IMG/VR virus record: IMGVR_UViG_3300044633_003049
Span: 62,001-126,000 of that record
Length of the DNA: 64,000 nucleotides
Strand: one strand, 5' to 3'
Shown: positions 21,185 to 37,373 of the stretch, piece by piece
Layout: every line of letters starts with the position of its first letter
Position numbering within the stretch: the stretch's first letter is position 1
Translations under genes and position numbers: made by a program
The notes under the pieces: generated by a model
What the model was told of the DNA's origin: nothing
Seen by the model: the letters and a program-made list of their open reading frames with translations, nothing else
Database searches by the model: none

Positions 21185-22599
21185 TTCATTGTAACATTTA
21201 TAAATTTAGTATTTTCATATAAAGATACATCAATATTTTCAACATTCAAAACATTTAATATATTGTTTAATCCATCTTCATTATGTTTAATTAAACCCTG
21301 TTGCATCTCCATAACAAATCTTTTTTCGTTTCTAGCGGTAGTTTCCCCCTTAGCCCATTTTCCTTTAACATAACCCTCATCTATATGGGGTATACAGTCA
21401 AAATTACCTTCCTTTCTGAATGGAATCACATTTTCAACCACATTAATATTTTCTTTTGAAATGTTAACATTAAATTCACATTCTTCTTTATTAATATTTT
21501 CTACAACTCCCTTTTTAAAATCCATTTGTAATAACAATCCATCTGAATCATGTAACGCTTCATTGATATCATTTATTGATTTATTAAAAATTCTAATTTC
21601 CGCAATTTTACCTTTAAAAAATGTATTAACGTGTGAACAAAATCCAATTATAAATGGTTGTAGATTATTATATGGTTTTAATTTTTTCTCAATTTTAAAT
21701 GGTGTGTTTTGTTTAGTTCCGTTTTGATTATTAATTAATTCATCGTTTATATATAATGACATCTCCTTTCTTTTACTATTATATGACATTGTCACCCATG
21801 TCCATTGATTTTCATATCTTTTTGCATAGTTGTAATAGTGATTACTATCTTTATCATACATAACCATATTAACTGAACGTGAATTATTAAACGATAATCC
21901 CCAAGTCCAAGAATCTAATTTTCTTATTAATGGGTACTCAATGAATTTCTTTTCTTCGTCCCCAACAAGCCAAATCGGTACCTTTTCTGGTTGTTGTTCA
22001 GCATTAAATAATATTGATATTGTATGGTCATTATCCAAACAACTATCTAATTCTTTATTAGACGGTATAATTATAAAGTTATTTATTCCATTAAAAGTTG
22101 CCGTTGTTTTATTTTTATAAGTTTTAAAAACATTATTCGTTGTATATCCTTCTAAATAACATCTCCAAAATAAGTCATCATCTTCCTGACCCCAATCCCA
22201 ATATTCATTTGAATATCCATTGGTTTTATATGCTTGTTCTTTTGTGAATAAAACGACACCTCCAAAGTATTGATCATAACCTAACCCGTAATTATATTTT
22301 GATAACTTTGTTGCAATGTGTGTTGGATGTTCTTCAGGATACGAATAATCAGCATCTACTTGTGGTAACATATCAACATCGTGCCATGCAACATAGTCAC
22401 ATCCGTCTTCAAACGCGTAATGTGCTGCAATATTTTTCATTGCACCTCTATTGAATAACTTTTCGTCTACTTGGTGACCAACATAAAACGTATGGTCAAT
22501 TCCATTATCTGTTAAATGTTTTGATAGATGTGGTATTAATTTATCAATGTGTTCTTTTCTATCTCTATATGGTATACAAATACCTAATTTATGACTCAT
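21181..22599 (-). CDS. GT7 beta-1,4-galactosyltransferase-like enzyme with inserted LamG domain
   Basis: IPYRDR, FNRGAMKN, WHDVD, YFGGV, GYSNEYWDWGQEDDD; LamG (WTWVTMSY, LYIND, FKGKIAEIRIFN); GT7 C-terminus DGLNN...INVTM. Confidence 0.85.
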   Translation of the reverse strand: MSHKLGICIPYRDRKEHIDKLIPHLSKHLTDNGIDHTFYVGHQVDEKLFNRGAMKNIAAHYAFEDGCDYVAWHDVDMLPQVDADYSYPEEHPTHIATKLSKYNYGLGYDQYFGGVVLFTKEQAYKTNGYSNEYWDWGQEDDDLFWRCYLEGYTTNNVFKTYKNKTTATFNGINNFIIIPSNKELDSCLDNDHTISILFNAEQQPEKVPIWLVGDEEKKFIEYPLIRKLDSWTWGLSFNNSRSVNMVMYDKDSNHYYNYAKRYENQWTWVTMSYNSKRKEMSLYINDELINNQNGTKQNTPFKIEKKLKPYNNLQPFIIGFCSHVNTFFKGKIAEIRIFNKSINDINEALHDSDGLLLQMDFKKGVVENINKEECEFNVNISKENINVVENVIPFRKEGNFDCIPHIDEGYVKGKWAKGETTARNEKRFVMEMQQGLIKHNEDGLNNILNVLNVENIDVSLYENTKFINVTMK

Positions 22600-24047
22600 A
22601 TTGCTACGTTAACGTGTGTTATGTTTTCACTTATCTGAATTTTTGAATGTTCAGCAAATTCCAATGTTGATAATCCGTCATTTTCCAATAACTCGTCATT
22701 TAATCTAACTTCATTATAAAATCTTAATTGATTCCATCTGGTTGCTTTGAATTTCCATTTGTTTTTATAAAACCCATTTTCTTTGTGTGGTAATAATGCA
22801 AATGTCGATTCTCTTCTATGTGGTATTTTTATTCTTTTATATTTTTCAAATTCTAAATCAACAATTTCACAATTAAAAATTTTACCGTTATTTAAATTAT
22901 CCGATAAATCTTTTAATTTATAACCTTCAGTAAAATTAGGGTCATAATATAGTTGTAGGTCTTGTGATGATATATAATCACCAAAATTTTCCTTTAAATT
23001 ATTATTTTCATTTTTAGATATTTCTAAAATTTCATTGTCATTTAAATTACAATTGTATACTGCGAATGTTGAAATATAACCATTAAAATAATTAGGATAT
23101 TGAGAATTAGGTGTGTCATTTCTTTTTGGGTTACCTACACCTAAATAAAAATATTTTTCATTATCGTATGAACGTATTTTTTTATAAAATACTTCTTTCC
23201 CAATCAGTTTTCCGTCTTGATATACTTTAATAACGTCGTTAATGTTGTCTAACACAACACATATATTCGTTTTATAATTTGTTATTATATTTGAATTAAC
23301 ATAAACCGCATTATTGTCTTTATCAAAAGTGCAGAAATTATATCTACGAAATGAATTATACGTAATTGAAAAATCGTATCCTGGAATTGAAAATATAGTA
23401 AAATCGTCAGAGTCTTTTGTATGGTCTAATATTAAATCAGTAGGATAAAACGAAACGAAAAATGTCATATTTTGATTAAGTTTAAATTCATTTCTTGCCT
23501 TAACATATGCATTTATACCATTAAGTTTTAATACTTTTGATGGTGATGTCCCCACATTCTGAATATCTAAATCATTTAATGGTATACCTTTTTTTTCACA
23601 TCTATAAAGTAAGTCAGTGTCCTCATAACCCCAACCCCAATACTTATTGGAATACCCATCTATTTGACGAAAATGTTCCATTGGGAACATTACAACTCCT
23701 CCAAAATATTCTTCGAAGGTTAATTTTTTATCATACTCTTCATTATTTAAAAAATGTGTTGATAAATGTAACGGGACCTCTGAATATGAATAATCAACAT
23801 GTATTGGCATCATGTCAATATCATGAAATACGACATAATCACAATTTAATTCTTCAGCATACTTAAATCCGATATTTAATAATGTTCCCCTATTAAATAA
23901 TTTAGCATCGTCTTGGTTAATAACAATTAATTCATAATTGATATCAAATTTTTCCATATATCTAACAAATCGTCTACTAAATTCTTTTAAATGACTTCTT
24001 CTATTTCTATATGGAACAACGACTCCTAATTTTTTACTTTTTTCCAC
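22596..24047 (-). CDS. GT7 beta-1,4-galactosyltransferase-like enzyme with inserted LamG domain
   Basis: VPYRNR, FNRGTLLNIG, FHDID, YFGGV, GYSNKYWGWGYED; LamG (VYQDG, FNGYISTFAVYN, DLSDNLNNG); C-terminus DGLSTL...HVNVAI. Confidence 0.85.
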   Translation of the reverse strand: MEKSKKLGVVVPYRNRRSHLKEFSRRFVRYMEKFDINYELIVINQDDAKLFNRGTLLNIGFKYAEELNCDYVVFHDIDMMPIHVDYSYSEVPLHLSTHFLNNEEYDKKLTFEEYFGGVVMFPMEHFRQIDGYSNKYWGWGYEDTDLLYRCEKKGIPLNDLDIQNVGTSPSKVLKLNGINAYVKARNEFKLNQNMTFFVSFYPTDLILDHTKDSDDFTIFSIPGYDFSITYNSFRRYNFCTFDKDNNAVYVNSNIITNYKTNICVVLDNINDVIKVYQDGKLIGKEVFYKKIRSYDNEKYFYLGVGNPKRNDTPNSQYPNYFNGYISTFAVYNCNLNDNEILEISKNENNNLKENFGDYISSQDLQLYYDPNFTEGYKLKDLSDNLNNGKIFNCEIVDLEFEKYKRIKIPHRRESTFALLPHKENGFYKNKWKFKATRWNQLRFYNEVRLNDELLENDGLSTLEFAEHSKIQISENITHVNVAI

Positions 24048-24264
24048 TCTTAGTTGTTACTTTACTGTCCTCAACGAAACCTTCTTTTACAAATTTGTTA
24101 TGAAATTCCGCTAGATAATATTGGGCTCTGTTACCCCACTCATCTTTATCGATTTCTTCAAACCAAACGGTTAAAGAATCTAATGAATTTGCAATTTTTT
24201 CTAAGGCTTTTACTTTTCTTGTTTCGAGAGCCATTAACTCGTCATTTGATGGTTTTACACTCAT
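24034..24264 (-). CDS. Hypothetical protein (76 aa)
   Basis: Overlapping, translationally coupled ORF within the operon. Confidence 0.6.
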   Translation of the reverse strand: MSVKPSNDELMALETRKVKALEKIANSLDSLTVWFEEIDKDEWGNRAQYYLAEFHNKFVKEGFVEDSKVTTKSGKK

Positions 24265-25118
24265 ATTGATGTTATTTTATTTATTAATTTATTCCAACTT
24301 TTATATCTGTTATATTCGGGATATATTAATCCCAATTCAAACATATATTCTCTTTTATTTAGATTTATTTTATATTTTGTTTTTAACAATTCAGTGAACA
24401 TTTTAAAATACTCATCTGAATAAGAATAATCTTCTTTTAATTCTGCAACCGCTTTCACTCTATCTATGGAAGTTTTATCCCATTTAAAATGATGTACTTG
24501 AACTGAATAGGATGGTATTGGTGCAATTGATGGATGACCCCAACCTTGCCATTTCCATGTGGTGTGTCCATCAATATTTGCATAGTGTTGACCTGAAGTA
24601 ATTTGTATTCCACCTCTAATTAAACATATTTTATTTGGACACGCTTTACTCATATGATATCTAAAAAAACCGGCATTTGGAAATTGTTCCCATATTGATA
24701 CATCATCTTTTAATTCAACAAACTCACCATCTTCTCCAATTCTATCAATAAAACCACCTCGAACAATATCCCATCCAAATTCTTCACAATCGTTAATTAA
24801 TGAAACAATATCATCATCAGGATATAAATGAAATTCATCAATGTCGGCAATCACCCACCAATCAAATGGTATTTGATCCTTAATGAAGTTATATAATGCG
24901 GTTACTTTCTCCCAATCAAAAACTCTATCTTCAATGACCTTAACAATCTTCACATTGTCATGGTCTTTAATAATTTCATTTATATCTTCTTCTAATGTTG
25001 GGTATAAATCTGTTTTATAAATTGCAATGTTAATCTCATCAACATATCTTTTATAATGTTTGATGAAATGTGGAAGTAAATTAACTCCGTGACCTATAAC
25101 TGTTAATAACCTAACCAT
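24261..25118 (-). CDS. GT2-like/GT92-like glycosyltransferase (GT-A fold)
   Basis: LLPHFIKHY, WWVIADIDEF (DxD), HHFKW. Confidence 0.75.
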   Translation of the reverse strand: MVRLLTVIGHGVNLLPHFIKHYKRYVDEINIAIYKTDLYPTLEEDINEIIKDHDNVKIVKVIEDRVFDWEKVTALYNFIKDQIPFDWWVIADIDEFHLYPDDDIVSLINDCEEFGWDIVRGGFIDRIGEDGEFVELKDDVSIWEQFPNAGFFRYHMSKACPNKICLIRGGIQITSGQHYANIDGHTTWKWQGWGHPSIAPIPSYSVQVHHFKWDKTSIDRVKAVAELKEDYSYSDEYFKMFTELLKTKYKINLNKREYMFELGLIYPEYNRYKSWNKLINKITSI

Positions 25119-25843
25119 TATTTTTTATTAATTACCGTTATACCGCTTGATGCTGGTTTGTTAGGTAATATACGAAAATTAAATAAATTAATCAAATTAT
25201 AAAGTGGATTTTTTTCTAATTCTTTAATAAATTTTGATGGACCGTCAAATCTATGGTGGTCTTTTTTTGCGTCCTCTGAAACTATTAATGATTCCTCGTA
25301 ATCTGAATCTGTATCGTGAATAACAATAATACCTTTATCGGTTAATAGTGTTGAATATAATTCAAAATCTTTCTTAACTCCTTCATATGAATGGTCACCA
25401 TCTATAAAGATAAAATCTAATTTAATATCTTGTAAAACAAAGAAATTATAATATGCATCTTCTGATGTTGATTTAATCAATCTGGGTTGAAACGTATGTC
25501 GGTAGTATGAATACTCATCCTCAAGGTCGTTAGGTCCTCCTACCCCATTACAAGCGTCAACCAGATAGGTTACACCAATATCACCCCAATTTAAAGTGTC
25601 GTTACCTTCAAATATTCCTTGTTTATGTAAATCTAATCTTGCTTGTGTTATAATACGAGGTATATATCCACCACCAGAACCGATACATGCGCAGTTCTTG
25701 GCTCTCATATGTTGTATTAACGAATAAACTATAATACCATCACCTAAATGTTCTTCGGTGGCACCATGTGTCCATCTATAAGGTACAGGTTCACCATAAT
25801 TGGTTGTAATTTTTTCTTTAATAAAATCTTGATTGGTAATCAT
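25118..25843 (-). CDS. Class I SAM-dependent methyltransferase (Methyltransf_24-like)
   Basis: IGSGGG, DFIFIDGDHSYEGVKKDF, GIIVIHDT. Confidence 0.85.
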   Translation of the reverse strand: MITNQDFIKEKITTNYGEPVPYRWTHGATEEHLGDGIIVYSLIQHMRAKNCACIGSGGGYIPRIITQARLDLHKQGIFEGNDTLNWGDIGVTYLVDACNGVGGPNDLEDEYSYYRHTFQPRLIKSTSEDAYYNFFVLQDIKLDFIFIDGDHSYEGVKKDFELYSTLLTDKGIIVIHDTDSDYEESLIVSEDAKKDHHRFDGPSKFIKELEKNPLYNLINLFNFRILPNKPASSGITVINKK

Positions 25844-25846
25844 AAC

Positions 25847-26527
25847 TTATTGTTTTATTACATTTATAACATTATCTTTTAACATATTAAACAATTCATT
25901 ATCTTTTTGTATATACACATTTGATAGTTTTGATGCAATATGTATTGAGAATCCTTCTCCACCTGCGTATATTTCTTTAATTCTTCTGATATCACAACTT
26001 TCTCTCACCACTTGCAACTTTTCATATTGTAAAAAGAAATCATCTTTAAGTCCTTGATTATTAAAGACAATGAAATATTCGTTAATTGTTTCTAACTCTG
26101 TAAATGTTGGTAATAATTTATCAACGTACTTCTTATATTCATCCCAATCTGGTGCAGTTAAATTGATTTCACCGATAAACTCTTTATTAACTTTATTTGA
26201 TAATAGATTATCAATGTATGTGATTCCGTCTTTGAATTTGTGGTTTTTTAAATCGTTAATAATTGAATAGTCATTGATGATGGTGTCGGCATCAATTAAT
26301 ATTGCTATGTTATGATATTTTAATATTTCTTTAACTAATATTATCTTATCATGATATGACTTAAGGTGTCTACCATAGTATATAGTTTTAGTTGTAAATT
26401 GTTCTGTGTCATCGGTTAAGACATAACAATCAATTCCAATATCTTTTAAATTGGTAACTTTTTCTTTTGTACTATTAAAATAGGAAACGTCACCGAAACA
26501 CATTACTCCTATACCGATATTATTCAT
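25847..26527 (-). CDS. DxD-type glycosyltransferase-like protein (GT6/GT8-like)
   Basis: Likely start ATG 26527 (MNNIGIGVMCFG) after CTTATATTAT; YVLTD, LIDADT. Confidence 0.5.
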   Translation of the reverse strand: MNNIGIGVMCFGDVSYFNSTKEKVTNLKDIGIDCYVLTDDTEQFTTKTIYYGRHLKSYHDKIILVKEILKYHNIAILIDADTIINDYSIINDLKNHKFKDGITYIDNLLSNKVNKEFIGEINLTAPDWDEYKKYVDKLLPTFTELETINEYFIVFNNQGLKDDFFLQYEKLQVVRESCDIRRIKEIYAGGEGFSIHIASKLSNVYIQKDNELFNMLKDNVINVIKQ

Positions 26528-26568
26528 ACCTATAATATAAGAAAAATATTTCAATAATTAAAATATTA

Positions 26569-28230
26569 TTATCTAATATAGACTTCCACTCTTGCACTTC
26601 TATTGATACCGGTAGTATCTTGACAACACCCAATCATATCTCCACCAGAATAGTTTCCATATCTACTATCCATACCAATACCACCACTTACATCATCCGA
26701 ACCTCTATATGGTCCTACTGCCAAAGTAGCTGGAGATGTGTATAATCCTTCACCATTTTCATTCCAACCAAACCCCCATCTAACTTTTGCATCCGTTGTA
26801 CCAAAATATAATGGGTTATTTCTAAAATTAAATCCATAAAATCTAATATCCACCTGACTTGAAAATACTCCACTTGCCCAACCAGTAAAAGTTTTTGCAT
26901 CTCTTAAAAAATATCCACCATAAGTACCACCATCACCACTTTCGTATGTTCCTGCATTAGTAAAAAAATCTACTAAATTTGTTCGCGTACTAGCTCTACC
27001 ACCATTAAACCCTTTTTCCATCCATATCCAATTTCCTGTTCCCGCAATACTACCACCAGTAGTTGGAATATCGGGCCATCTAGCCATTAAATCTGTACCT
27101 TCAAAATAATTGAATGCGTCATATTTAGCATCACCATCATCTTGATTTAAGTTATTTTGATTTAATACATTTTGTGTTGTCCAATAACTTGCCCCATAAT
27201 TAAAAGTAGTTCCTCTTGTGGCTTTCATTACCATCATCCAACCTCCTCCATCATATGCACTATCCATAATACAAAATGTTTTTCTTGGGCCAATGTTAGG
27301 TAAATTTATATAATATACCCCATTTGGTGCATTTGAATTTAAGGTTTTTATTGTTTGTGCCGAATCGGCCGGATTAAATGCTGAACCTAATGGTGTATCT
27401 ACTCCGTATCTACCTCTTTGTTCATTAAATATATTTCCAATTTCTTCATCACTTAATGCTCGGTTATAAATCATAACTGCTCCTAAATAACCAATAAGTA
27501 ATTCTCCCGTATTACCTTCACCAAATCTCAATGTTTCAGTATTTGTAGTTGAACTAACGGCACCTGTTACATATGCACATCGTATTGTATCAATAAATGT
27601 TGCTTTTGATGACCCGTCACTTCTAATGACAACTTGTTGCCACTTACTTCCTATTATTGAATTATTGGGTGTATCTATCGCTGCCAATGAGTAATTTGTT
27701 TCATAATGAATATATCCGAATGCACTTCTCAATGTTGCGGCGTATTGTTGTGAATCTCCTTTACTAATTAATCCGTGCCAAGTTCCACCACCTAATGATG
27801 GATTTACCCAAATTAACGCAGTATATTGTTGGGTACTCGTAAAATCCAATGAACTATGATGTGCAACGTTTGCTCTTGCGGTTCCATCAAAATATAAAGA
27901 ACCTCCTCCGGTCGTATTAAATGAAACACCTGAACCAGGTAGAGTTAAATTATTTGAATTTCCTGATAAATCTGTTAATGTACTACCATTACCACTATAA
28001 CATTGTGGATCACCAGCATCTATATAACAAACTAAACCAGATGTGCTATAATTTTCTTTTCTTTTTTGTGCGCTCATCCACTTAGTACCATCATACACTT
28101 CAACTTCGGTACGACTTGAATTATATCGTATCATACCAGTTGTTGGTGATGGTCTTTGTGTTCCAGTTCCCGATGGTAGTCCTAAATATCCGGTAGAACT
28201 TGTTATTGTTGTATTTTTAAGTGTTGCCAT
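26569..28230 (-). CDS. Fibre tip/adhesin: anchor domain + LamG + fibrinogen C-terminal-like domain
   Basis: LPSGT..QRP..G.IRYN..E.YDG.W anchor; LamG (DLSGNSN, IYNRALS); GVYYI..FC.MD..DGGGW fibrinogen-like motif. Confidence 0.75.
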   Translation of the reverse strand: MATLKNTTITSSTGYLGLPSGTGTQRPSPTTGMIRYNSSRTEVEVYDGTKWMSAQKRKENYSTSGLVCYIDAGDPQCYSGNGSTLTDLSGNSNNLTLPGSGVSFNTTGGGSLYFDGTARANVAHHSSLDFTSTQQYTALIWVNPSLGGGTWHGLISKGDSQQYAATLRSAFGYIHYETNYSLAAIDTPNNSIIGSKWQQVVIRSDGSSKATFIDTIRCAYVTGAVSSTTNTETLRFGEGNTGELLIGYLGAVMIYNRALSDEEIGNIFNEQRGRYGVDTPLGSAFNPADSAQTIKTLNSNAPNGVYYINLPNIGPRKTFCIMDSAYDGGGWMMVMKATRGTTFNYGASYWTTQNVLNQNNLNQDDGDAKYDAFNYFEGTDLMARWPDIPTTGGSIAGTGNWIWMEKGFNGGRASTRTNLVDFFTNAGTYESGDGGTYGGYFLRDAKTFTGWASGVFSSQVDIRFYGFNFRNNPLYFGTTDAKVRWGFGWNENGEGLYTSPATLAVGPYRGSDDVSGGIGMDSRYGNYSGGDMIGCCQDTTGINRSARVEVYIR

Positions 28231-28236
28231 AATTTT

Positions 28237-28944
28237 TTATTTTATCCATAATTGAACATGTGAAAGATAATGTGCTTCATCTGCTTGTGCCTGATCTGCT
28301 CCACATACATGTCTTGCTGTAAATGATGTTGATGTGTGGTCATAATATCCACTATCAAATATCACATATCCATCATTTCCATAAGTACCATTTCCCCAAG
28401 GTCTATAAGTGTATGTTTTTGGATTACTCCAAGTTGCGGACGCCCCTGATTGTAAAACTGATGTTGATGGTGCGGCATTATAAATTTTTGTAAATCTCCA
28501 AAATTCAGTTTCTGTTCCTGATGAATTCATTAAATATAAATTACTTGTTTCGGTATCCAATGAGTCCACTAAATGCCAAAATACCATATAACGAACTTGT
28601 GTATGTGTTGGAATTGAACTCAATGTTAATGTATATGTTGCAGGACCTGTCGACCAACCATGTGCGGTGACATGTCCTAATTCGCCAAAGTTTAACATTG
28701 AGAATGTTGTACTATTATTCCAATTTCCTGTATATAAATTCGCATCTCTACCTTCGTAATAATGTAAATAACTTTCCGTTCTAGCATAAGGATTTAACCA
28801 ATTATTAATATAAACTTCAGGTCTACCTAAAGTAGTATTATATCTAACATATCCATTAGACGGAGATGGTCTTTCAGCTGTACTACCTGTTGGTAATCCA
28901 ATAAATCCAGTGTCGTTAATTGTTAAATTTTTTAAACTTGCCAT
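28237..28944 (-). CDS. Fibre tip/adhesin with shared anchor and unknown beta-rich head
   Basis: MASLKNLTINDTGFIGLPTGSTAERP..GYVRYN anchor. Confidence 0.65.
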   Translation of the reverse strand: MASLKNLTINDTGFIGLPTGSTAERPSPSNGYVRYNTTLGRPEVYINNWLNPYARTESYLHYYEGRDANLYTGNWNNSTTFSMLNFGELGHVTAHGWSTGPATYTLTLSSIPTHTQVRYMVFWHLVDSLDTETSNLYLMNSSGTETEFWRFTKIYNAAPSTSVLQSGASATWSNPKTYTYRPWGNGTYGNDGYVIFDSGYYDHTSTSFTARHVCGADQAQADEAHYLSHVQLWIK

Positions 28945-28949
28945 TATAT

Positions 28950-29813
28950 TTAAATATTAAATCTATTTCTTTGCGCGTTATAATTTTGTAAAACTTGAGC
29001 TCCACTTAATCCTATACTATATATTCTTGCAATTGCAATTTGTCCTTGAAAATTATGCAACCCATCTGTCAATCCACTTCCATATGTTCCAACTACATAT
29101 GTGGCGGCGGCAATTGTCCCTGTCTGTGCCGCAGACCATACTTCGGTACCATTCACATATGCTTTACTCGTTGAACCATCCCATGTACCTACAATGTGTG
29201 ACCAAACATTATTGGGGATATTACCAACTGCACTATATGGTCTACTACTATCGGTAGTATTTGCCCAATGTAAAGAGTGTGTACTACCACCATCTGCGGA
29301 ATTAAATATACCTAAATATGTCGTATTTGTTGCAGAAACCACACCACCTCTCACAGTTCCCGTACTTACTGTTCTTGTTGGTTTAATCCAACCTTCCATA
29401 GTTATTTGTGTTGTTGGTAATGTATTTAATGTAGAAATTCTAATATAATCATTAGTTCCGTCAAATGAAACGGTACCTCCCGAACCATCAGCTGGTGTAT
29501 ATGTTGGACTGTTTACAAATATCCCATGTGCACATTGTGAACTAACATCATACCACACATTACCACCGCGATAACTCGTTGGTTTACCACTATCTAAATG
29601 AAGTAATAAGTTTGATGTTACAATACCACCTTCCGCAATTCTACCGGTTGTTTGATCTATCCAATAACTACCGTTGTAATATTCAACTAAACCCATAGTT
29701 GTATTAAATCTAACATATCCAGTCAATGGTGACACAGGTCTTTGTGCTGTTGTTCCCGATGGTAATTGTATATAACCAGTGTCGTTTATGGTAAGATTTG
29801 TAAGATTTGACAT
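28950..29813 (-). CDS. Fibre tip/adhesin: anchor + LamG domain
   Basis: LPSGTTAQRP..GYVRFN anchor; LLLHLD, FDGTNDY, WSHIVGTWDG, YVNG, QNYNAQRNRF. Confidence 0.75.
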   Translation of the reverse strand: MSNLTNLTINDTGYIQLPSGTTAQRPVSPLTGYVRFNTTMGLVEYYNGSYWIDQTTGRIAEGGIVTSNLLLHLDSGKPTSYRGGNVWYDVSSQCAHGIFVNSPTYTPADGSGGTVSFDGTNDYIRISTLNTLPTTQITMEGWIKPTRTVSTGTVRGGVVSATNTTYLGIFNSADGGSTHSLHWANTTDSSRPYSAVGNIPNNVWSHIVGTWDGSTSKAYVNGTEVWSAAQTGTIAAATYVVGTYGSGLTDGLHNFQGQIAIARIYSIGLSGAQVLQNYNAQRNRFNI

Positions 29814-29815
29814 TA

Positions 29816-30082
29816 TTAAGGTTTTGGATTGTTTTCTTTAACCTCTTTTATTTTATTAAACCATTCACCATTACTTGTTAAACTTCCACTCACATTTAAT
29901 TCATGCCACAACATATCTAATTGATTACCTAATGATGGGTATATTTGTTGTCTATCTCTTTGATATTGTGTTGAGTAATGTTCTGCTAAACCAACATAGA
30001 AACCATATCTTTGGTCTTCTGTAAGTGGTGTTCCATCAACTGGACTTAATAATGGTTCTCCTTTATCTAATTCGTGTATCAT
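29816..30082 (-). CDS. Tail fibre assembly chaperone-like protein
   Basis: Y...R...YPS...QLD.LWH...W...I..VK...PKP pattern common beside phage fibre genes. Confidence 0.55.
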   Translation of the reverse strand: MIHELDKGEPLLSPVDGTPLTEDQRYGFYVGLAEHYSTQYQRDRQQIYPSLGNQLDMLWHELNVSGSLTSNGEWFNKIKEVKENNPKP

Positions 30083-30091
30083 ATTATATAA

Positions 30092-30532
30092 TTATTTTAC
30101 TCTTGTTAATATTGACGATTCATATCCCGATGAATTTAATATTCTTATATTAAAATAAACAGTTAATCCATTTTGTCCTGATGTATTGGTAAATCTTAAC
30201 CAATTTCTATCAACATTACCTTCTTGATAATGAGAAACTGAATAATCTCCCCACGATAAAATTGGTGTGTGTTGTAATCCATATCTTGATACATCAAACT
30301 CAAATATTCCATATCTCCATGTTCCCGTTGTAAAATTAAAAAAATTACAAAGTCCAATTGTTCTTGCGTATCCACTAACATTACATATTAAATCAACGGA
30401 AGAACCATTATTAATCGCCGCCGTTCCTGTCCATTCATTCATTGCCCCATATGTATTACTCATTAACATTTTTGGTGATGTTATTGAAGTTGCAGTTAAT
30501 TCAGAAGATGTTGTTGCTATTAAATTTGCCAT
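30092..30532 (-). CDS. Small beta-rich fibre-tip paralog
   Basis: MANL start; VDL, F..SRYGL, WLRFTN, SSILTRV shared with the next two genes. Confidence 0.6.
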   Translation of the reverse strand: MANLIATTSSELTATSITSPKMLMSNTYGAMNEWTGTAAINNGSSVDLICNVSGYARTIGLCNFFNFTTGTWRYGIFEFDVSRYGLQHTPILSWGDYSVSHYQEGNVDRNWLRFTNTSGQNGLTVYFNIRILNSSGYESSILTRVK

Positions 30533-30999
30533 TATCTTACTCGTTGTGTTAAATATGATGATGTGAAATCACCGGGTCCTTGTACATTTAATACAAAGAG
30601 ATATGTACCATTACCCCATTCAGAACCTATCGTATTGTAGAATCTACAATAATTTGTCCCATATGATGGATTATGTCTAGCGGCAGACCACGTACCTGTA
30701 CTTGTTAATGTTTGTATATTAAAACCATATTCAGATAATTGCCAATAAAAACTACCACAATGTATTTGAGATTGATAGCAAACCCAACTACAAAACCCAT
30801 ACATACGATTATGAACTCCCGTATTACCAAATAGGTCAACATAATTTGTTGCACTATTAACCGTTGTTGGGATAAAGACTGTTCCACTATACTCCCTCAT
30901 CATATGATTATAACTTGTATTATTTAATATACGTGGTGATGTGAAACTCGTAGATGTGGTTAAAATACCATTTACTGTTGTATTTTGTAAAGTTGCCAT
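30532..30999 (-). CDS. Small beta-rich fibre-tip paralog
   Basis: MATLQN start; VDL, LSEYGF, YCRFYN, WGN, SSYLTQRV. Confidence 0.6.
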   Translation of the reverse strand: MATLQNTTVNGILTTSTSFTSPRILNNTSYNHMMREYSGTVFIPTTVNSATNYVDLFGNTGVHNRMYGFCSWVCYQSQIHCGSFYWQLSEYGFNIQTLTSTGTWSAARHNPSYGTNYCRFYNTIGSEWGNGTYLFVLNVQGPGDFTSSYLTQRVR

Positions 31000-31469
31000 T
31001 ATACGTATCTTGTTAAAATTGGTGACGTTATTGCGTTAGCATTTGGAGCAAATAATGTTATATTAACTAAACATGTGGCATTTCCCCACGATACGTTATA
31101 TTGATTTGTAAATCTTAACCAACTTTTACTACCATCACTTGGGTCTTGGTAATATGAGAATGTTATTAGTTGGTCGTTAGTTGGTCCTGATGTAATTTGT
31201 AAACCATATTGTGATAATGCAAACCAAACATTTTGAGTACCGTTATAACTTTGATATGATAAAAAACTAATATAACCTGTTACCCATTGCCAATTACTAT
31301 TATTACAAAGAACATCTGTATATGGTGTGGCGGTATAATATGGTGATATTACAGAAACATTTCCACCCCATTGTTGTAAAGCCATTGGATTAGAACAAAT
31401 TGTACTACTTGCATTTGACGTAGATGTTGCATTGTATGTTGTTGCAGTTGTACCTATTAATGTCGCCAT
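30999..31469 (-). CDS. Small beta-rich fibre-tip paralog
   Basis: MATL start; LSQYGL, WLRFTN, WGN, SPILTRYV. Confidence 0.6.
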   Translation of the reverse strand: MATLIGTTATTYNATSTSNASSTICSNPMALQQWGGNVSVISPYYTATPYTDVLCNNSNWQWVTGYISFLSYQSYNGTQNVWFALSQYGLQITSGPTNDQLITFSYYQDPSDGSKSWLRFTNQYNVSWGNATCLVNITLFAPNANAITSPILTRYV

Positions 31470-34400
31470 TATTTATTTGATTTAAGTTCTTCAATTTCTT
31501 TCTTTAAATCTTTTATTGCTTCAATCAAATATGAAACTACTCTACCGTAAGAAACGGAATCAGGTAATCCTTCTTCATTTTTATTTACCAATTCAGGTGC
31601 AATTTCATTTAACTCTTCCGCTATTAAACCAATCTCTTTAACACCTGTATCTTTTTTAATGTATGAAACACCTCTCATTTTAAGAACATTATCTAAACCA
31701 TATTTTAAAGTTTCAATGTTATCCTTATATCTTACTGATGAGTTTTCTGTTAATGTTCCACCTACTGTTAAGTTACCGGTTGTTGATACTGCACCTGTTA
31801 CCGTTAATGTTGAACCATCAAATGTTAAATTCGCTTCCGCATTTAACGTAACACCACCGACACTTGTCATTACTCTATTATCTACCGCATTTGTGATTGT
31901 TGTTGTACCACTAGAACCTGATGAACCGTTGGTTCCATTACTACCACTTGTTCCTGAACTACCGTTCGTTCCGTTAGAACCCGAAGTACCATTCGTTCCA
32001 TTAGAACCTGATGAACCTGAACTACCATTAGTTCCATTAGAACCTGAACTACCATTTGTACCGTTACTACCACTAGTTCCTGAAGAACCATTTGTACCGT
32101 TAGAACCTGAAGTTCCTGATGTTGCCGCAGTATATGATGTTCCGTTAATATTTAAACTTGTTACACTTAATGAACCTGTAACTTCTGTATTTGTACTAAT
32201 TTTAACAGTTGTACCGTCATCTGAAATATTACTATCACCAAGATGTTCTTGACCTAATGATTTTAATACTCTATTAGTTGTTGGTAAAATCTCATTTCCT
32301 AAACTATTGTAAGTTTGAGCACCTACCATAACTACCGAAGACGTTACGGTTGATTGATTTGTGTGAACATAAACAAACTGATTGTTTAATGAGTCAAATA
32401 AGAATGAACCTGAAACTAATGGTGATGAACCACTATCTAACACTGACAAACCAGCAAATCTTACACCAGGAGATGAAGCGTTAACCGTAATGACATTGTC
32501 ATTTACTCTTAGTTGAGACGCTGTCACATAAATTATTGATGATGACCCTAAAACATTTAAGTTTTGTGTAATTGTTAATGAACCAGTAATTGTTGTGTTT
32601 GAATTAATATTAACTAATGAAGCATTATCGGTTATGTTTGAATTAACCATACTGTTAGACGAGAACTTACCCAAAACATTGTCAGTACCAGAAACTGTAA
32701 CTGAAGTTCCTGAAGAACCATTTGTTCCGTTAGAACCTGAACTACCATTTGTTCCGTTAGAACCACTTGAACCTGAACTACCGTTTGTTCCATTACTACC
32801 TGATGTACCATTTGTTCCATTACTACCTGATGTACCATTTGTTCCATTACTACCTGATGTACCATTTGTTCCACTAGTTCCGTTTGTGCCGTTAGACCCT
32901 GATGATCCGTTACTTCCACTTGTCCCCGAAGAACCGTTGGTTCCATTAGAACCTGATGTTCCTGATGTCATTGAACTAAATGTTGTACCATTAACAGTAA
33001 TTCCGTTTGTGAAATTTGCTGAACCTGATACTATAATATCATCAGCAAAAACAACACTATTACCACCTGAACTTAATATTTTAAATCCGTCTTGAACTAT
33101 AACATTTCCTCTAATGTCAACCGAACCTGTCGTTGGGTCAATTAATATATTACCTCCGCCAGATGATTTCAATTGGATATCTCCATCCGCTGTTTGAAAT
33201 GTAATTGTATCTGTACCTTGTTCTAAAATTTTAATTGATTGACCGTTGTCGGTTGTAATCTGTAATTCTTGATTTGTCGAACCTAATACTTTTTGTCCGT
33301 CAATGTATAAAGATGCACTTGATAAGTATAAGTGTCTAAACGGATTCGTTACCGTACCTAAATCATATGACCCACTACCAAAAGGTATTAATGATCCACT
33401 AAATGTTTGGTCTCCTTTAAATGTGTTTGATCCTGTAGTTGCTAAACCTGATGTACTTGATCCACCTGTGAGTGGTGTTCCATTAACTAATAGACTACCT
33501 GAAATATAAACGTTATTAAATTGTTTTAATGAACTACCTAAATTATATAGACCATTTGCTGATGGTGTTATTGTCCCAACAGCAGATAAATCTTGAGCAC
33601 CTTCTACTTGATGTCCACCTCTAACTATATGAACTTCACCCGCTTGTGCAATTGGGAATGTTATTTGTAAATTGTTTGAATCTATTGATGTTATCTCACT
33701 TGGGATTATAACTTTTCTATTACTATCCCAAACTGTTACACCTGGATAATCAATGTCTAAATTGTGAGCAACAGACCATGTTGTTGCCGATGTGTATGTT
33801 TCTGTATAACCACCAATACCACTAGCACCTGTTGCACCGACACCACCTAATGTGGCAATCACTGTACCTGTTTGTGCAATTGAAAAATATACTTCAATAT
33901 TATTAGAATCTATCGCTCTAATTCCTGTTGGTATAACAACATAACCATCACTATCAAATACTGTAATTGATGGGTATCTTTCATTCATACCATGATTTAA
34001 TGACCATGTGGTTGCCGCAACTGTAACTGTTGTCTTCATTGTTGAACCTGAAACAATAAATGGATTTTCAACATATGAGGCGGTTAAGGCGTATGTTGCA
34101 AATGATGATGTTCCTGCAAATGTAGATGTATTTGAACCTGTATATGTGTTAAATGCCGTTTCGTCTAACTTACCTGTACCCACAACTGCACCATTAACAT
34201 ATAATGATCCAGTAATCTTTACTGATCCAGTAAAATTGTGATTATCGTCAAATGTATTACCAAATGCGGTAGAACCTGATTCATACAATACCGAAGATGT
34301 AACTAATGCTGTGTGAATTTCTTTTGCTGTAAGTGTTCCTGTAATTGTTAAATCACCATTTACTTTTGCGTTATTTGTGGTTTCCCAAACTGAACCTGTT

Positions 34401-35305
34401 AAAGCAAATAAACTATCTCCTGATGTTCCTGATGAACCGTTGGTTCCGTTAGACCCACTAGTTCCAGAACTACCGTTTGTTCCATTACTACCACTAGTTC
34501 CTGAAGACCCGTCTGTTCCATTAGAACCTGATGAACCGTTAGTTCCGTTAGAACCTGAAGAACCATTCGTTCCGTTAGAGCCTGAAGTTCCTGATGAACC
34601 GTTGGTTCCATTTGACCCTGATGTTCCAGAAGATCCTGATGAACCATTTGTACCATTACTACCACTAGTTCCTGAAGAACCGTTGGTTCCGTTACTTCCT
34701 GATGTACCACTTGTAGTTGAGGTATATTCAGTTCCGTTTATATTAAATGAACCTGTTAAATTAATTGAACCTGATAGAACTAAATTATTATTCTCATCAA
34801 GTAACATTTGTCTGTTACCATTTCTACTGAAAACTAAACCATCAACATCGGTTGTTGCACCTCTTGCAGCACCTATCGTCCAATTCTCACCGCTCCAATT
34901 AAAACGAATACCTGCAGCAACTCTATCTGGAGTGTTGAAACTTGCAGGATTGTAAACTGAACTATCAGGTACGAATGCTTGAACATTTGCAACAGGGTCA
35001 GAACCCGAAACGACTAATGATGTTAATGATGTGTTACCTAAAACTTTTAAAGAACCTGTAACATTTAATGAACCCGTAATATTTTCTGTTCCAAGTAAAT
35101 TGAAACTTCCACTTAGATTTAATGAACCTGTGTTTTGAGTATTTGTAGTTAAAACTTCCTCTATTGAGGCTGATAATGATCCTGATTTGGCAAAATATAA
35201 TTTACCATCGGTTGTGTTTATTGCTAATTCTCCTAATTGTAATTGGGAATTGGTAGGCCTATTCCCACCAGTGGAACTTCTACGTAGTTTTACTATTTGA
35301 CTCAT
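31469..35305 (-). CDS. Long tail fibre with Gly-X-Y repeats and C-terminal intramolecular chaperone (peptidase S74)
   Basis: N-terminal KLRRS...GELAINTTDGKLY; three GSNGTNGSS repeat blocks; C-terminal SS.RYKDNI...GLIAEE...L.EAIKDL..EI. Confidence 0.85.
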   Translation of the reverse strand: MSQIVKLRRSSTGGNRPTNSQLQLGELAINTTDGKLYFAKSGSLSASIEEVLTTNTQNTGSLNLSGSFNLLGTENITGSLNVTGSLKVLGNTSLTSLVVSGSDPVANVQAFVPDSSVYNPASFNTPDRVAAGIRFNWSGENWTIGAARGATTDVDGLVFSRNGNRQMLLDENNNLVLSGSINLTGSFNINGTEYTSTTSGTSGSNGTNGSSGTSGSNGTNGSSGSSGTSGSNGTNGSSGTSGSNGTNGSSGSNGTNGSSGSNGTDGSSGTSGSNGTNGSSGTSGSNGTNGSSGTSGDSLFALTGSVWETTNNAKVNGDLTITGTLTAKEIHTALVTSSVLYESGSTAFGNTFDDNHNFTGSVKITGSLYVNGAVVGTGKLDETAFNTYTGSNTSTFAGTSSFATYALTASYVENPFIVSGSTMKTTVTVAATTWSLNHGMNERYPSITVFDSDGYVVIPTGIRAIDSNNIEVYFSIAQTGTVIATLGGVGATGASGIGGYTETYTSATTWSVAHNLDIDYPGVTVWDSNRKVIIPSEITSIDSNNLQITFPIAQAGEVHIVRGGHQVEGAQDLSAVGTITPSANGLYNLGSSLKQFNNVYISGSLLVNGTPLTGGSSTSGLATTGSNTFKGDQTFSGSLIPFGSGSYDLGTVTNPFRHLYLSSASLYIDGQKVLGSTNQELQITTDNGQSIKILEQGTDTITFQTADGDIQLKSSGGGNILIDPTTGSVDIRGNVIVQDGFKILSSGGNSVVFADDIIVSGSANFTNGITVNGTTFSSMTSGTSGSNGTNGSSGTSGSNGSSGSNGTNGTSGTNGTSGSNGTNGTSGSNGTNGTSGSNGTNGSSGSSGSNGTNGSSGSNGTNGSSGTSVTVSGTDNVLGKFSSNSMVNSNITDNASLVNINSNTTITGSLTITQNLNVLGSSSIIYVTASQLRVNDNVITVNASSPGVRFAGLSVLDSGSSPLVSGSFLFDSLNNQFVYVHTNQSTVTSSVVMVGAQTYNSLGNEILPTTNRVLKSLGQEHLGDSNISDDGTTVKISTNTEVTGSLSVTSLNINGTSYTAATSGTSGSNGTNGSSGTSGSNGTNGSSGSNGTNGSSGSSGSNGTNGTSGSNGTNGSSGTSGSNGTNGSSGSSGTTTITNAVDNRVMTSVGGVTLNAEANLTFDGSTLTVTGAVSTTGNLTVGGTLTENSSVRYKDNIETLKYGLDNVLKMRGVSYIKKDTGVKEIGLIAEELNEIAPELVNKNEEGLPDSVSYGRVVSYLIEAIKDLKKEIEELKSNK
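31905..32120 (-). repeat. Gly-X-Y coding repeat (GTS/GSN/GTN/GSS)
   Basis: 9-nt periodic degenerate repeat; coordinates approximate. Confidence 0.9.
32700..32968 (-). repeat. Gly-X-Y coding repeat
   Basis: 9-nt periodic degenerate repeat; coordinates approximate. Confidence 0.9.
34418..34712 (-). repeat. Gly-X-Y coding repeat
   Basis: 9-nt periodic degenerate repeat; coordinates approximate. Confidence 0.9.
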
Positions 35306-35432: not shown

Positions 35433-37373
35433 TTAATATTTTGCGGCTATTGAGTTAACTCTATTGTTCATTATGGTATTACCATTTGTTGTTGCTGACC
35501 AAGTTAAACCGTCGGTTGATGTTGCCAATTGATTTGGTCCTCCTACACCGCCCGCAACCCATTTAGTACCGGCCCAAGTTACACTTAACGCCGAGAATGA
35601 GAATATTGTGTTTCCGTTTGTAGATCCCGACCATGTTATACCATCAGATGAATATGCCAATGCGTTTGTACCTTGTCCTGCGGCAACCCATTGTGAACCA
35701 TTATATGATATACCATAACCAGTACCTGAGATTCTGCTATTTCCACTTGTTGAACCTGTCCATGTTATGCCGTCTGATGAATATGCGATTCTATTTGCAC
35801 CTGTACCAACTGCAACCCATTTATCACCACCCCAAACTACATTATTACATGATCCTGTAAATATTGTACCACTGTTTGCGGATGCCGTCCAAGATATACC
35901 ATCATCTGAATATGCTATTGTTGTTCTATTTCCAGTACCACCAGCAGGTGATGAACCTACCGCAACCCATCTACTTCCATTATATGCCACAGTATTTGGT
36001 ACACTACCAATTACATTCGAATTTGATGCCGCTGTCCAAGTTATACCATCTGTTGAATATGCAAATTTGGCGGCGCCTGATGAAATACCGACCGCAACCC
36101 ATTTATCTCCTCCATATCCTATACCTCTAACATTTGTTGTAAACATGGATGAACCATTTGTTGATCCCGACCATGTATTTCCATCAGAAGACCAAAGTAA
36201 AGCATTTGAATTACCTCCACCTGCAGTTCCTCCTGCAACAAATATATTTCCATCAGTTGCAACGGCAAGTGCCGGTTGGGTTATAAATGTGGCACCATTA
36301 GATGAATTTGTCCAATTATCACCACCATCATATGAATAACTTAATACGTTTACAGCACCCGCAGCAACAATTACATTAGTCGTCATTGATGTTGCTGTCG
36401 GTGTTATTGTTGGTGTTGGTGTATTGGTAGGTGTGTTAGTTGGTGTGATACTTGGTGTTACCGTATTTGTTGGTGTATTTGTTGGAGTAGGAGTAGGAGT
36501 TTCGGTATTCGTAGGAGTTGGTGTTAATACTTCAGTTTCTGTAGGAGTAGGAGTAGGAGTTTCGGTATTCGTAGGAGTTGGGGTTGGAGTTATATAAGTA
36601 CTCTCACAATCATTACATCCACCAGTTCCAAATGATGTGGTAAACGCGTCGTCTATCGGAGCATTTATCTTACCAATGACTGAATAACACCCACTTGGTG
36701 TTGCTCCTGTGAATGTGTAATAGTTTACATCTCCAAGAACTATAAATCCTGGTCCTAAATCGACAACTAAAACATTTAGATTAGTACATCCTGAAATTGT
36801 GTATGTAGTTATTGAACTCGAATCAGTTGGAGTTGGAGTTGGTGTATTCGTAGGTGTTTCTGTTGGAGTATTAGTTGGTGTTGGTGTTGTAGTATTGGTA
36901 GGTGTTGGTGTAGGTGTATCAGGAATTATTTCACTAGATGTTGGAGTTGGTGTGACTGTTGCAGTTGGTGTAATAGTTGGTGTTGGGGTTGGAGGTGGTG
37001 CACCTTCACCATATGATGTGAAATGACCATTATCATTTAACCAAGTTTTAGCATCAGTTGCATTTGTAAATGGTTCTAAACCATCTGTTATTGGTAAAAC
37101 GTTTAATAACTCTAATAAAGATTGTTCTGTTAAATCTGTTGATCTCCAGAAATTAATATATGAATCCTCATCTGTCGGTGTTGGATGATTTCCCGTTGGT
37201 ACTTGGTTGGCAATAACATAACCTAACTCTTCATCAGGTCCCATCCACCATTTAACCCCACCTGGATTTTGTGAATAATCTTGTTCTGAAACACCTATTG
37301 CGATGTTTCCAATTTGTGTTGTTCCATCTATGGTGGATCCTGTGTTGTATGCGAAGGGTCTTGTTGTTGCCAT
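35433..37373 (-). CDS. Pro/Thr mucin-like stalk protein with C-terminal Asp-box beta-propeller
   Basis: TPTPT repeat tracts; repeated YSxDGxTW Asp-boxes and KWVAVG blades. Confidence 0.75.

What the first reader, a model, noticed from the sequence alone, without database searches (positions are those of the whole stretch)
26569..31469. Array of six small tip proteins sharing an M-A/S-x-L N-terminus with variable heads
Seen: downstream of the S74 fibre are three diverged ~150 aa paralogs (shared S.YG, RF.N, S..LT..V), a chaperone-like gene, then three genes with a common LP.G..RP..G..R.N anchor but different heads (LamG; unknown; LamG plus fibrinogen-like). All six start MATL/MANL/MASL/MSNL followed by a Thr-rich strand. 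Inference: interchangeable or heterotrimeric receptor-binding tips that dock by a common N-terminal strand. Two sets of three could each form a heterotrimer.
Basis: partly seen in the sequence, partly recalled or inferred. Interest (0 to 1): 0.62.

Follow-up and report, generated by a model that had tools for sequence, protein, structure and literature searches.

The report
Two tip-protein cassettes behind self-cleaving fibre
Behind a tail-fibre gene of an uncultured freshwater giant phage lie two conserved sets of small sugar-binding "tip" genes that share a short N-terminal tag also seen on phage T4 fibre joints; they probably clip onto the fibre end to set host range, though binding was not shown.

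Summary

They are two separate modules, not one array of six.

- **Module S (30092-31469, plus the 88-aa gene 29816-30082).** It holds three old paralogues. Each has a roughly 30-residue Thr/Ser-rich arm and a beta-sandwich like the distal knob of phage tailspikes. The block is complete, in fixed order, and directly behind a fibre ending in a Peptidase_S74 self-cleaving chaperone in all 10 distinct related contigs.
- **Module H (26569-29813).** It holds three proteins with a shared 50-residue anchor and lectin-type heads: LamG, a CBM-like sandwich, and LamG plus an intelectin-like domain. This module is mobile. It follows an S74 fibre directly in 10 other contigs, in 2 to 5 copies.

T4 gp36 and gp37, which join fibre segments end to end, start MADLK and MATLK.

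The best reading is that these are accessory receptor-binding tips that dock by their N-termini on the fibre end exposed after chaperone cleavage, as gp38 does on gp37 in phages T2 and S16.

Docking and heterotrimer formation remain inferred; the one complex prediction gave no verdict. The variable copy number of H argues against an obligate H heterotrimer.

I rate this a new variant of a known kind, of moderate interest.

The parts
31469..35305 (-). Tail fibre, 1278 aa. It has a canonical fibre N-terminus, three blocks of collagen-like repeats and a C-terminal self-cleaving chaperone.
   Evidence: Pfam Collagen E 1.8e-32 and Peptidase_S74 E 1.4e-9. PHROG tail-fibre families.
31472..31741 (-). 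Peptidase_S74 intramolecular chaperone, residues 1189-1278. The predicted autocleavage site is N1188|S1189, within the junction TLTENSSVRYKDN.
   Evidence: The Pfam match starts at residue 1189, profile position 1. The junction is conserved in all 12 related fibres. The S16 site S^SDRRIKK is from PMC7917993. Cleavage itself was not tested.
30999..31469 (-). S1, 156 aa: a disordered Thr/Ser-rich N-terminal arm (residues 1-30) plus an 8-strand beta-sandwich knob. Its start overlaps the fibre stop by 1 nt.
   Evidence: AF2 model with pLDDT 82. VIA Z 8.8 and 8.7 to tailspike C-terminal domains 6c72 and 6e1r. BFVD and Atlas hits to phage fibre ends.
30532..30999 (-). S2, 155 aa: paralogue of S1. 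Its start overlaps the S1 stop by 1 nt.
   Evidence: The position-2 clade has support 100/99.
30092..30532 (-). S3, 146 aa: paralogue of S1 and S2. Its start overlaps the S2 stop by 1 nt.
   Evidence: The position-3 clade has support 96/93.
29816..30082 (-). 88-aa accessory protein (c88), always the fourth gene of the S block. It is a probable fibre or adhesin assembly factor.
   Evidence: phrog_9114 and phrog_1787, both of unknown function. Related to P-TIM40 gp045, E 2e-6. Relatives follow adhesin arrays in cyanophages. No Pfam match.
28950..29813 (-). H1, 287 aa: N-terminal anchor (residues 1-55, window 29649-29813) plus a LamG head.
   Evidence: Laminin_G_3 E 1e-20. The anchor matches many PHROGs.
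28237..28944 (-). H2, 235 aa: anchor (28780-28944) plus a CBM-like / galactose-binding-like beta-sandwich head carrying an invariant His/Asp/Glu cluster.
   Evidence: AF2 model with pLDDT 87.5. VIA Z 10.1 to CBM61 (2xom) and 10.0 to CBM22 (2w5f). Foldseek hits CBM27 and CBM4. Invariant residues.
26569..28230 (-). H3, 553 aa: anchor (28066-28230), LamG (27439-27873) and an intelectin-like / fibrinogen-related C-terminal domain (26572-27393).
   Evidence: Laminin_G_3 E 1.9e-11. phrog_1325 E 5e-40. PDB hit to XEEL intelectin, E 1.1e-3. The profile search hits two intelectins only, E 0.02-0.03.

Best explanation
**What it is.** The stretch encodes two cassettes of accessory receptor-binding proteins that serve a tail fibre ending in a self-cleaving S74 chaperone.

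**Shown**
- Gene structure, paralogy and predicted folds.
- Strict synteny of the S block (S1-S2-S3-c88) with S74-ending fibres.
- Mobility and variable copy number of the H cassette, which also follows S74 fibres.
- Lectin-type heads.
- Conservation of the M-A/S-x-L N-terminal tag, and its presence on T4 gp36 and gp37.

**Inferred**
- The fibre trimerises and its C-terminal chaperone cuts itself off at about N1188|S1189.
- The new distal end is then capped by the small proteins, which attach through their N-terminal arms. This would resemble the gp38 adhesin docking on cleaved gp37 in T2/S16-type phages, and gp36/gp37 joining end to end in T4.
- S1, S2 and S3 most likely form one 1:1:1 knob. 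All three are ancient, non-redundant and always present, and their starts overlap the preceding stops.
- The H proteins act as independent, exchangeable glycan-binding heads.
- c88 assists assembly.
For: - **S block synteny.** The block sits behind an S74-ending fibre in 10 of 10 distinct loci, while the fibre's distal part varies.
- **H array synteny.** The array lies directly behind an S74 fibre in L011, L012, L034-L037, L039, L040, L041 and L048.
- **Same-slot exchange.** Seen between L021 and L011 and between the window and L034.
- **Triplication.** Three position-specific clades, with the triplication older than the lineage split.
- **S fold.** It matches terminal knobs of tailspikes and fibres. 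Remote relatives carry the domain at the C-end of short fibre-like proteins.
- **Heads.** LamG, CBM-like and intelectin-like.
- **T4 comparison.** gp36 starts MADLK and gp37 starts MATLK.
- **S16 precedent.** Chaperone cleavage exposes the gp38 docking surface (PMC7917993).
- **Gene overlaps.** The fibre stop and the S1, S2 and S3 starts overlap as TAATG.
- **Annotation.** The anchor matches PHROGs annotated as virion structural protein: phrog_20787 and phrog_6005.
Against: - No physical or predicted interaction was obtained, and there are no virion proteomics because the phage is uncultured.
- Solved S74 fibres (T5 pb1, K1F endosialidase; own knowledge) use their own cleaved end as the receptor-binding tip, without extra proteins.
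- In cyanophages S-H9-2, P-TIM40 and S-RIM44, anchored or tagged adhesins follow fibres that lack an S74 end. The tag therefore does not need an S74 tip.
- The fibre region just before the junction is highly variable while the S block is conserved. This leaves only the short conserved junction strand as a common docking site.
- The conserved S74 domain could also be merely a recombination boundary that keeps the block linked.
Confidence: 0.5

Rival explanations
1. The S and H proteins are independent short fibres or side fibres that attach elsewhere, such as the baseplate or the joints of the other collagen-like fibres. Linkage to the S74 fibre would arise only because the conserved S74 domain acts as a recombination boundary.
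For: - The fibre distal domains upstream of the junction are swapped while the S74 domain and the S block stay conserved.
- Tagged adhesins in cyanophages follow non-S74 fibres or a baseplate wedge gene.
- The H anchor aligns weakly with the canonical fibre N-terminal domain, which joins fibres to proximal partners (hhalign E 0.031).
- In L049-L054 the H2-type head sits on proteins with the canonical fibre N-terminus.
Against: - 20 of 20 S or H arrays in this phage group lie directly behind an S74-ending gene or behind the S block, often with overlapping stop and start.
- The two other S74 fibres of the same genome have no such genes, so the linkage is specific rather than general.
Confidence: 0.27
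2. S1-S3, with or without c88, are assembly chaperones for the fibre and are not part of the virion.
For: - They lie directly downstream of the fibre, where T4 gp38 and Mu Tfa-type chaperones are encoded (PMC7289586).
- Remote single-copy relatives are followed by a Phage_tail_APC gene.
Against: - The fibre already carries its own intramolecular chaperone.
- The S fold is that of terminal knob domains, and it occurs fused to the C-end of fibre-like and collagen-repeat proteins.
- A separate chaperone-like gene (c88) follows the trio.
Confidence: 0.12
3. The H proteins form one obligate H1-H2-H3 heterotrimer through their near-identical anchors.
For: - The order H1-like, H2, H3 is conserved in the window and in 8 other distinct loci that hold exactly three; L034 holds the same three after two further anchor genes.
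- The anchors are 39-65% identical.
Against: - Copy number varies: five anchor genes in L034, two in L022/L026, and other mixes in L048.
- The first head is variable in size (279-419 aa).
Confidence: 0.15

Closest known systems
T2/S16-type long tail fibre: gp37 with a C-terminal intramolecular chaperone, plus the gp38 adhesin
   Same: - The fibre ends in an S74 chaperone with a Ser-Ser junction.
- The adhesin gene or genes lie directly downstream.
- In S16, cleavage exposes the docking surface for the adhesin's N-terminal attachment domain (PMC7917993).
   Different: - There is no sequence or fold relation to gp38.
- The arms lack Trp prongs and the heads lack a polyglycine sandwich.
- There are three paralogous knob proteins plus 2-5 lectin-headed proteins instead of a single adhesin.
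- Binding is not shown.
T4 gp36-gp37 end-to-end fibre joints
   Same: gp36 starts MADLK and gp37 starts MATLK, like the six proteins here. The N-termini of both join the preceding fibre component (established knowledge of T4 long-fibre assembly).
   Different: - The T4 proteins are long fibre segments, whereas these are an arm plus a head.
- Beyond the first five residues, similarity is weak (hhalign E 0.031 for the H anchor against the fibre N-domain).
Virophage DSLV2 tripartite tail proteins (PMC12724248)
   Same: Three consecutive small paralogous tail genes, shown by co-purification to form a 1:1:1 heterotrimer with a receptor-binding head.
   Different: - Those proteins have the gp37 tip fold with the collar domain PF07484, which Pfam does not detect here.
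- They are modelled (AlphaFold3) on the capsid, not on a fibre.
C-terminal knob domains of phage tailspikes (Acinetobacter phages Fri1 gp49 and vB_ApiP_P1)
   Same: The same beta-sandwich fold: Z 8.8 and 8.7, rmsd about 3 A over 100-105 residues.
   Different: There the domain is the fused end of one homotrimeric chain. Here it is a free-standing, triplicated gene product with an N-terminal arm. Sequence identity is 5-13%.

Membership tests
T2/S16 gp37-gp38 adhesin system | The fibre ends in a self-cleaving S74 intramolecular chaperone. | tested here: met
   Peptidase_S74 at E 1.4e-9, above the Pfam cut-off. The junction ENSSVRYKDN aligns with S16 S^SDRRIKK. Cleavage itself is not testable here.
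T2/S16 gp37-gp38 adhesin system | The adhesin gene lies immediately downstream of the fibre gene. | tested here: met
   The S1 start overlaps the fibre stop. The same arrangement holds in all related loci.
T2/S16 gp37-gp38 adhesin system | A gp38-type N-terminal attachment domain with Trp prongs, and a polyglycine-rich receptor-binding sandwich. | tested here: not met
   The first 30 residues of all six proteins hold no Trp. The models are plain beta-sandwiches. No named adhesin or tail-fibre-assembly (gp38-type) family appears among the Pfam and PHROG matches.
T2/S16 gp37-gp38 adhesin system | Physical attachment of the adhesin to the cleaved fibre tip. | not testable with these tools
   This needs co-expression, proteomics or cryo-EM.
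Laminin_G_3 (concanavalin-like lectin) | A Pfam PF13385 match above the gathering score. | tested here: met
   H1 scores 74.9 bits and H3 scores 44.8 bits, against a cut-off of 27.6.
Intelectin / fibrinogen-related domain (H3 C-terminus) | Sequence match across the domain, including the Ca/ligand site. | tested here: inconclusive
   Only the first 90 or so of 274 residues match XEEL (E 1.1e-3). The profile search hits two intelectins at E 0.02-0.03. Pfam Fibrinogen_C is not detected. No model was made.
Carbohydrate-binding module, galactose-binding-like fold (H2 head) | The beta-sandwich fold, plus membership of a curated CBM sequence family. | tested here: inconclusive
   At fold level, Z is 9.9-10.1 to CBM61, CBM22 and CBM27. 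No Pfam family matches. Sugar binding was not tested.
Phage_tail_APC / XkdW (for the 88-aa gene) | A Pfam PF16778 or PF09636 match. | tested here: not met
   No Pfam hit even at E 10. The only links are a positional analogy, BLASTP E 0.007 and an Atlas lead at 0.90.
DSLV2-type tripartite collar-domain tail proteins | [quoted passage not shown] | tested here: not met
   No such Pfam hit in S1-S3 or H1-H3.

The most novel reading that the evidence does not exclude
The M-A/S-x-L N-terminal arm is a general 'address tag' for distal fibre joints, shared from T4 gp36/gp37 to freshwater giant phages. In this phage, the three equivalent chain ends exposed by S74 cleavage can each take a different tagged protein. 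One fibre type would then be capped either by a heterotrimeric S1-S2-S3 knob or by mixed sets of 2-5 lectin heads. A single burst would carry a combinatorial population of tips, a form of host-range bet-hedging.
Probability: 0.15. Interest if true: 0.8.

Novelty: new variant of a known kind. Interest (0 to 1): 0.55.

Why it matters
**Host range.** Host range of uncultured freshwater phages is set by fibre tips that cannot yet be read from sequence. This locus gives three things:
- A previously unnamed family of free-standing knob proteins, with no Pfam or PHROG match. An exhaustive profile search of 1.84 billion proteins found only 58 clusters.
- A clear case of cassette exchange behind a conserved self-cleaving fibre end.
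- A short N-terminal tag that could be used to recognise detachable tip proteins in metagenomes.

**If docking is confirmed.** The gp37-gp38 principle would extend to multi-subunit and multi-head tips. The tag and the junction would also become a candidate handle for swapping receptor-binding heads in laboratory phage work.

Tried and rejected
- **Complex prediction.** The S1+S2+S3 job, with S3 as partner, gave no verdict (score 0.26, below the mark of 0.32; controls not run). It counts neither for nor against a heterotrimer.
- **Cultured phage records.** Megablast of the region found nothing. tblastn of S1 found nothing at E up to 1.
- **T4-like cyanophage idea.** Rejected. S-H9-2 terminase and neck proteins find nothing in the genome; only head domains and a weak sheath match appear. 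Pfam Terminase_6N finds nothing in the 63%-complete record.
- **H anchor against the canonical fibre N-domain.** hhalign gives E 0.031 and probability 1.6%. The alignment register is suggestive, but this is too weak to claim homology.
- **Foldon idea.** A resemblance of the anchor to the T4 fibritin foldon was recalled from memory only.
- **c88 as Phage_tail_APC or XkdW.** No Pfam match. It shares no PHROGs with a true APC protein. The word search returned only unnamed relatives.
- **'Always three genes before a c88-like gene'.** True for the window, P-TIM40, S-RIM44 and L049-L054. It is not true for S-H25 or MED4-184, so it was dropped as a rule.
- **C1q/TNF-like fold for S.** Only Z about 4.
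- **Paper search.** A search for phage, tail fiber and intelectin returned no papers.
- **RNA evidence.** Contigs of one lake metatranscriptome library cover the S block of a relative. The tool warns that DNA can be present in such libraries, so this is not counted as expression.
- **Operator limits.** No alternative genetic code was needed.
Full report
**Context**

The window lies in a single 211,784-bp virus record with 31% G+C. CheckV rates the record 63% complete. Contigs that carry homologues of these genes reach 213-334 kb, and the DNA occurs in lake and freshwater metagenomes from 21 studies.

The phage is not a T4-like cyanophage. Cyanophage terminase and neck proteins find nothing in the genome. 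Only head domains are shared with cyanophages.

The neighbourhood is a fibre region. It holds four collagen-repeat fibres and LamG proteins, followed downstream by methyltransferase and glycosyltransferase genes. Gene starts lack Shine-Dalgarno sequences.

Seven minus-strand genes fill 26569-31469. The fibre upstream (31469-35305) has collagen repeats and a Peptidase_S74 domain at residues 1189-1240.

- S1, S2 and S3 are full-length paralogues: 28-31% identity, E about 1e-10.
- H1, H2 and H3 share a 50-residue anchor, with E 9e-16 and 4e-15.
- Only these three of 433 ORFs have the anchor motif. Only these six real genes have the M-A/S-x-L start followed by Thr/Ser.
- S and H proteins share nothing detectable apart from the N-terminal nonapeptide.

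**What the proteins are**

*S family.*
- It has no Pfam or PHROG match.
- The word search found only unnamed metagenomic relatives of 144-159 aa.
- An exhaustive profile search of 1.84 billion representatives gave 58 clusters at E up to 1e-3. A few carry the domain at the C-end of short fibre-like proteins.
- The AF2 model (pLDDT 82) has an unstructured arm at residues 1-30 and an eight-strand beta-sandwick at residues 31-156.
- The best structural matches are the C-terminal knobs of Acinetobacter phage tailspikes: 6c72 at Z 8.8 and 6e1r at Z 8.7, with rmsd about 3 A. Further tailspike and fibre ends follow.
- BFVD and the ESM Atlas return phage tail-fibre, tailspike and collagen-repeat proteins.
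- Z near 8-9 is only just above the tool's stated background. The consistency of the top hits carries more weight than the score.

*H2.*
- The head (residues 57-235, model pLDDT 87.5) is a CBM-like sandwich. Z is 10.1 to CBM61 and 10.0 to CBM22, with phage fibre and baseplate proteins also listed.
- It carries an invariant His/Asp/Glu cluster.
- In metagenomes the same head is fused to LamG, He_PIG and canonical fibre N-termini.

*H1 and H3.*
- Both carry Laminin_G_3.
- The H3 C-terminal 274 residues hit only intelectins in the PDB: XEEL at E 1.1e-3, and by profile search XEEL and a serum lectin at E 0.02-0.03.

*The 88-aa gene (c88).*
- It matches only PHROGs of unknown function.
- It is related to P-TIM40 gp045 (E 2e-6).
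- c88-like genes close adhesin or short-fibre arrays in several cyanophages and in L049-L054.
- Remote single-copy S relatives are followed instead by a Phage_tail_APC gene.
- c88 itself fails the Pfam tests for both candidate chaperone families. An assembly role is therefore an inference from position.

**Comparative anatomy**

This is the strongest evidence.

*S block.*
- The block S1-S2-S3-c88 is complete and in the same order in 10 distinct loci: the window (identical to L017-19), L004, L005, L008 and L020-L025.
- In all ten the gene directly upstream ends in an S74 chaperone with the junction ...T-x-T-E-N/S/T-S-S/A....
- The fibre part before the junction differs widely between loci.
- A tree gives three position-specific clades with support 100/99, 100/99 and 96/93. 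Each clade repeats the same lineage split, so the triplication is old and no copy has been lost.

*What follows c88 varies.*
- The H trio in the window.
- Two anchor proteins in L022 and L026.
- LamG proteins with another tag (MP-x-D-I/V-x-G) in L020.
- Long fibres elsewhere.

*H cassette.*
- It follows an S74 fibre directly, without the S block, in L011, L012, L034-L037, L039, L040 and L041, and in the T4-like contig L048.
- L034 has a fibre that begins like the window's and similar downstream genes. It carries five anchor genes and no S block.
- The fibres of L011 (H cassette) and L021 (S cassette) share their N-terminus. Their last 240 or so residues are 59% identical.
- S and H are therefore alternative or additive cassettes in one slot.
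- The other two S74 fibres of this genome have no such genes downstream.

**The tag**

- M1, A2 and L4 are nearly invariant in the S family.
- Distant relatives and cyanophage gp38-like adhesins also start M-A/S-x-L followed by a strand-like stretch.
- T4 gp36 starts MADLKVG and gp37 starts MATLKQIQ. By established knowledge of T4 fibre assembly, these N-termini join the preceding fibre component.
- Codons differ between S2 and H3 at 5 of 27 positions. There is no sign of recent gene conversion.

**Mechanism**

In phage S16 the last 113 residues of gp37 form an intramolecular chaperone that is cut off at S^SDRRIKK. This exposes the docking surface for the gp38 adhesin (PMC7917993). The window's fibre has the same kind of junction (ENSSVRYKDN).

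I therefore propose the following steps:
- The fibre is cleaved at about N1188|S1189.
- The small proteins dock on the new end through their N-terminal arms.
- S1-S3 form one heterotrimeric knob, for three reasons:
  - The paralogues are ancient and non-redundant.
  - Their starts overlap the preceding stops by 1 nt.
  - Three consecutive tail paralogues of a virophage have been shown to form a heterotrimer (PMC12724248).
- The H proteins are exchangeable lectin heads.

All of these steps are inferred. The single complex job gave no verdict and is not used as evidence.

The variable H copy number argues against an obligate H heterotrimer.

The main rival is attachment elsewhere on the virion, with the conserved S74 domain acting only as a recombination boundary. 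It is favoured by cyanophage arrays that follow non-S74 fibres.

**Novelty and verdict**

The principle of an adhesin on a cleaved S74 fibre is known. Four things are new:
- A knob family with no Pfam or PHROG match.
- Its triplication.
- The coexistence and exchange of two cassettes.
- The recognition that one short tag spans them and T4 gp36/gp37.

I rate it a new variant of a known kind, with interest 0.55.

No other genetic code was used.

Noticed in passing
window 21181-26554: Directly downstream of the tip cassettes lies a conserved sugar-modification island. It holds two paralogous 472- and 483-aa proteins; the partly seen homologue in relative L008 hits Glyco_transf_7N/7C plus Laminin_G_3. 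The homologue of the 241-aa gene at 25118-25843 in relatives hits Methyltransf_24. Two further small genes (235 and 285 aa) complete the island. The island follows the fibre region in most relatives, whichever cassette precedes it.
   Followed up: partly
window 35433-37373 and 37399-39093: Two proteins have long Pro/Thr-rich linkers. The 646-aa protein carries at least six S-x-D-G-x-x-W (Asp-box-like) repeats, suggesting a sialidase-type beta-propeller, although Pfam gave no hit at E 0.01. The 564-aa protein has two LamG-like parts.
   Followed up: no
L005:15980-18064, L008:14737-16829, L024:13189-15279, L020:9660-13541: Relatives carry a second class of small head proteins with a different N-terminal tag (MP-x-D/N/Y-I/V/L-x-G). 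Again they come in sets of three or four, interleaved with an 83-96-aa gene, and lie behind fibres that lack an S74 end. This suggests tag classes matched to fibre types.
   Followed up: partly
window 28237-28776 (H2 head); alignment A6: Across 54 relatives the head has invariant His, Asp and Glu residues: H95, H114, H124, D127, D130, E132, H203, E223 and H229. This looks like a metal site or an active site rather than a plain lectin surface.
   Followed up: no
window 26000-31900: Gene starts lack Shine-Dalgarno sequences. The fibre, S1, S2 and S3 genes overlap as TAATG. The lack of Shine-Dalgarno sequences is typical of hosts such as Bacteroidota or cyanobacteria (own knowledge). The host was not determined.
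   Followed up: no
window 31496 joined to 27148 (contigs of runs X13 and X17): Contigs in two lake metagenomes join the end of the S74 domain to a point inside the H3 intelectin-like domain, with 17 other letters between. A metatranscriptome-library contig continues from c88 into about 1.5 kb unlike H1. These may be further cassette variants or chance joins at conserved stretches.
   Followed up: no
L049-L054 (e.g. L049:4791-8625): Another phage group has three short fibres (about 319, 501 and 318 aa) with canonical fibre N-termini and glycine-rich, gp38-like C-ends. The middle one carries the H2-type head. They are followed by a 131-aa c88 relative.
   Followed up: partly
genome G000:C1:36890-38701 and 148809-151139 (outside the window): Two more S74-type fibres (603 and 776 aa) are present in the same genome, without tagged small genes downstream.
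   Followed up: partly
window 52599-53441 and 61014-61829: A DNA methyltransferase (phrog_56) and a phage sigma factor (phrog_351) lie upstream of the fibre region.
   Followed up: no
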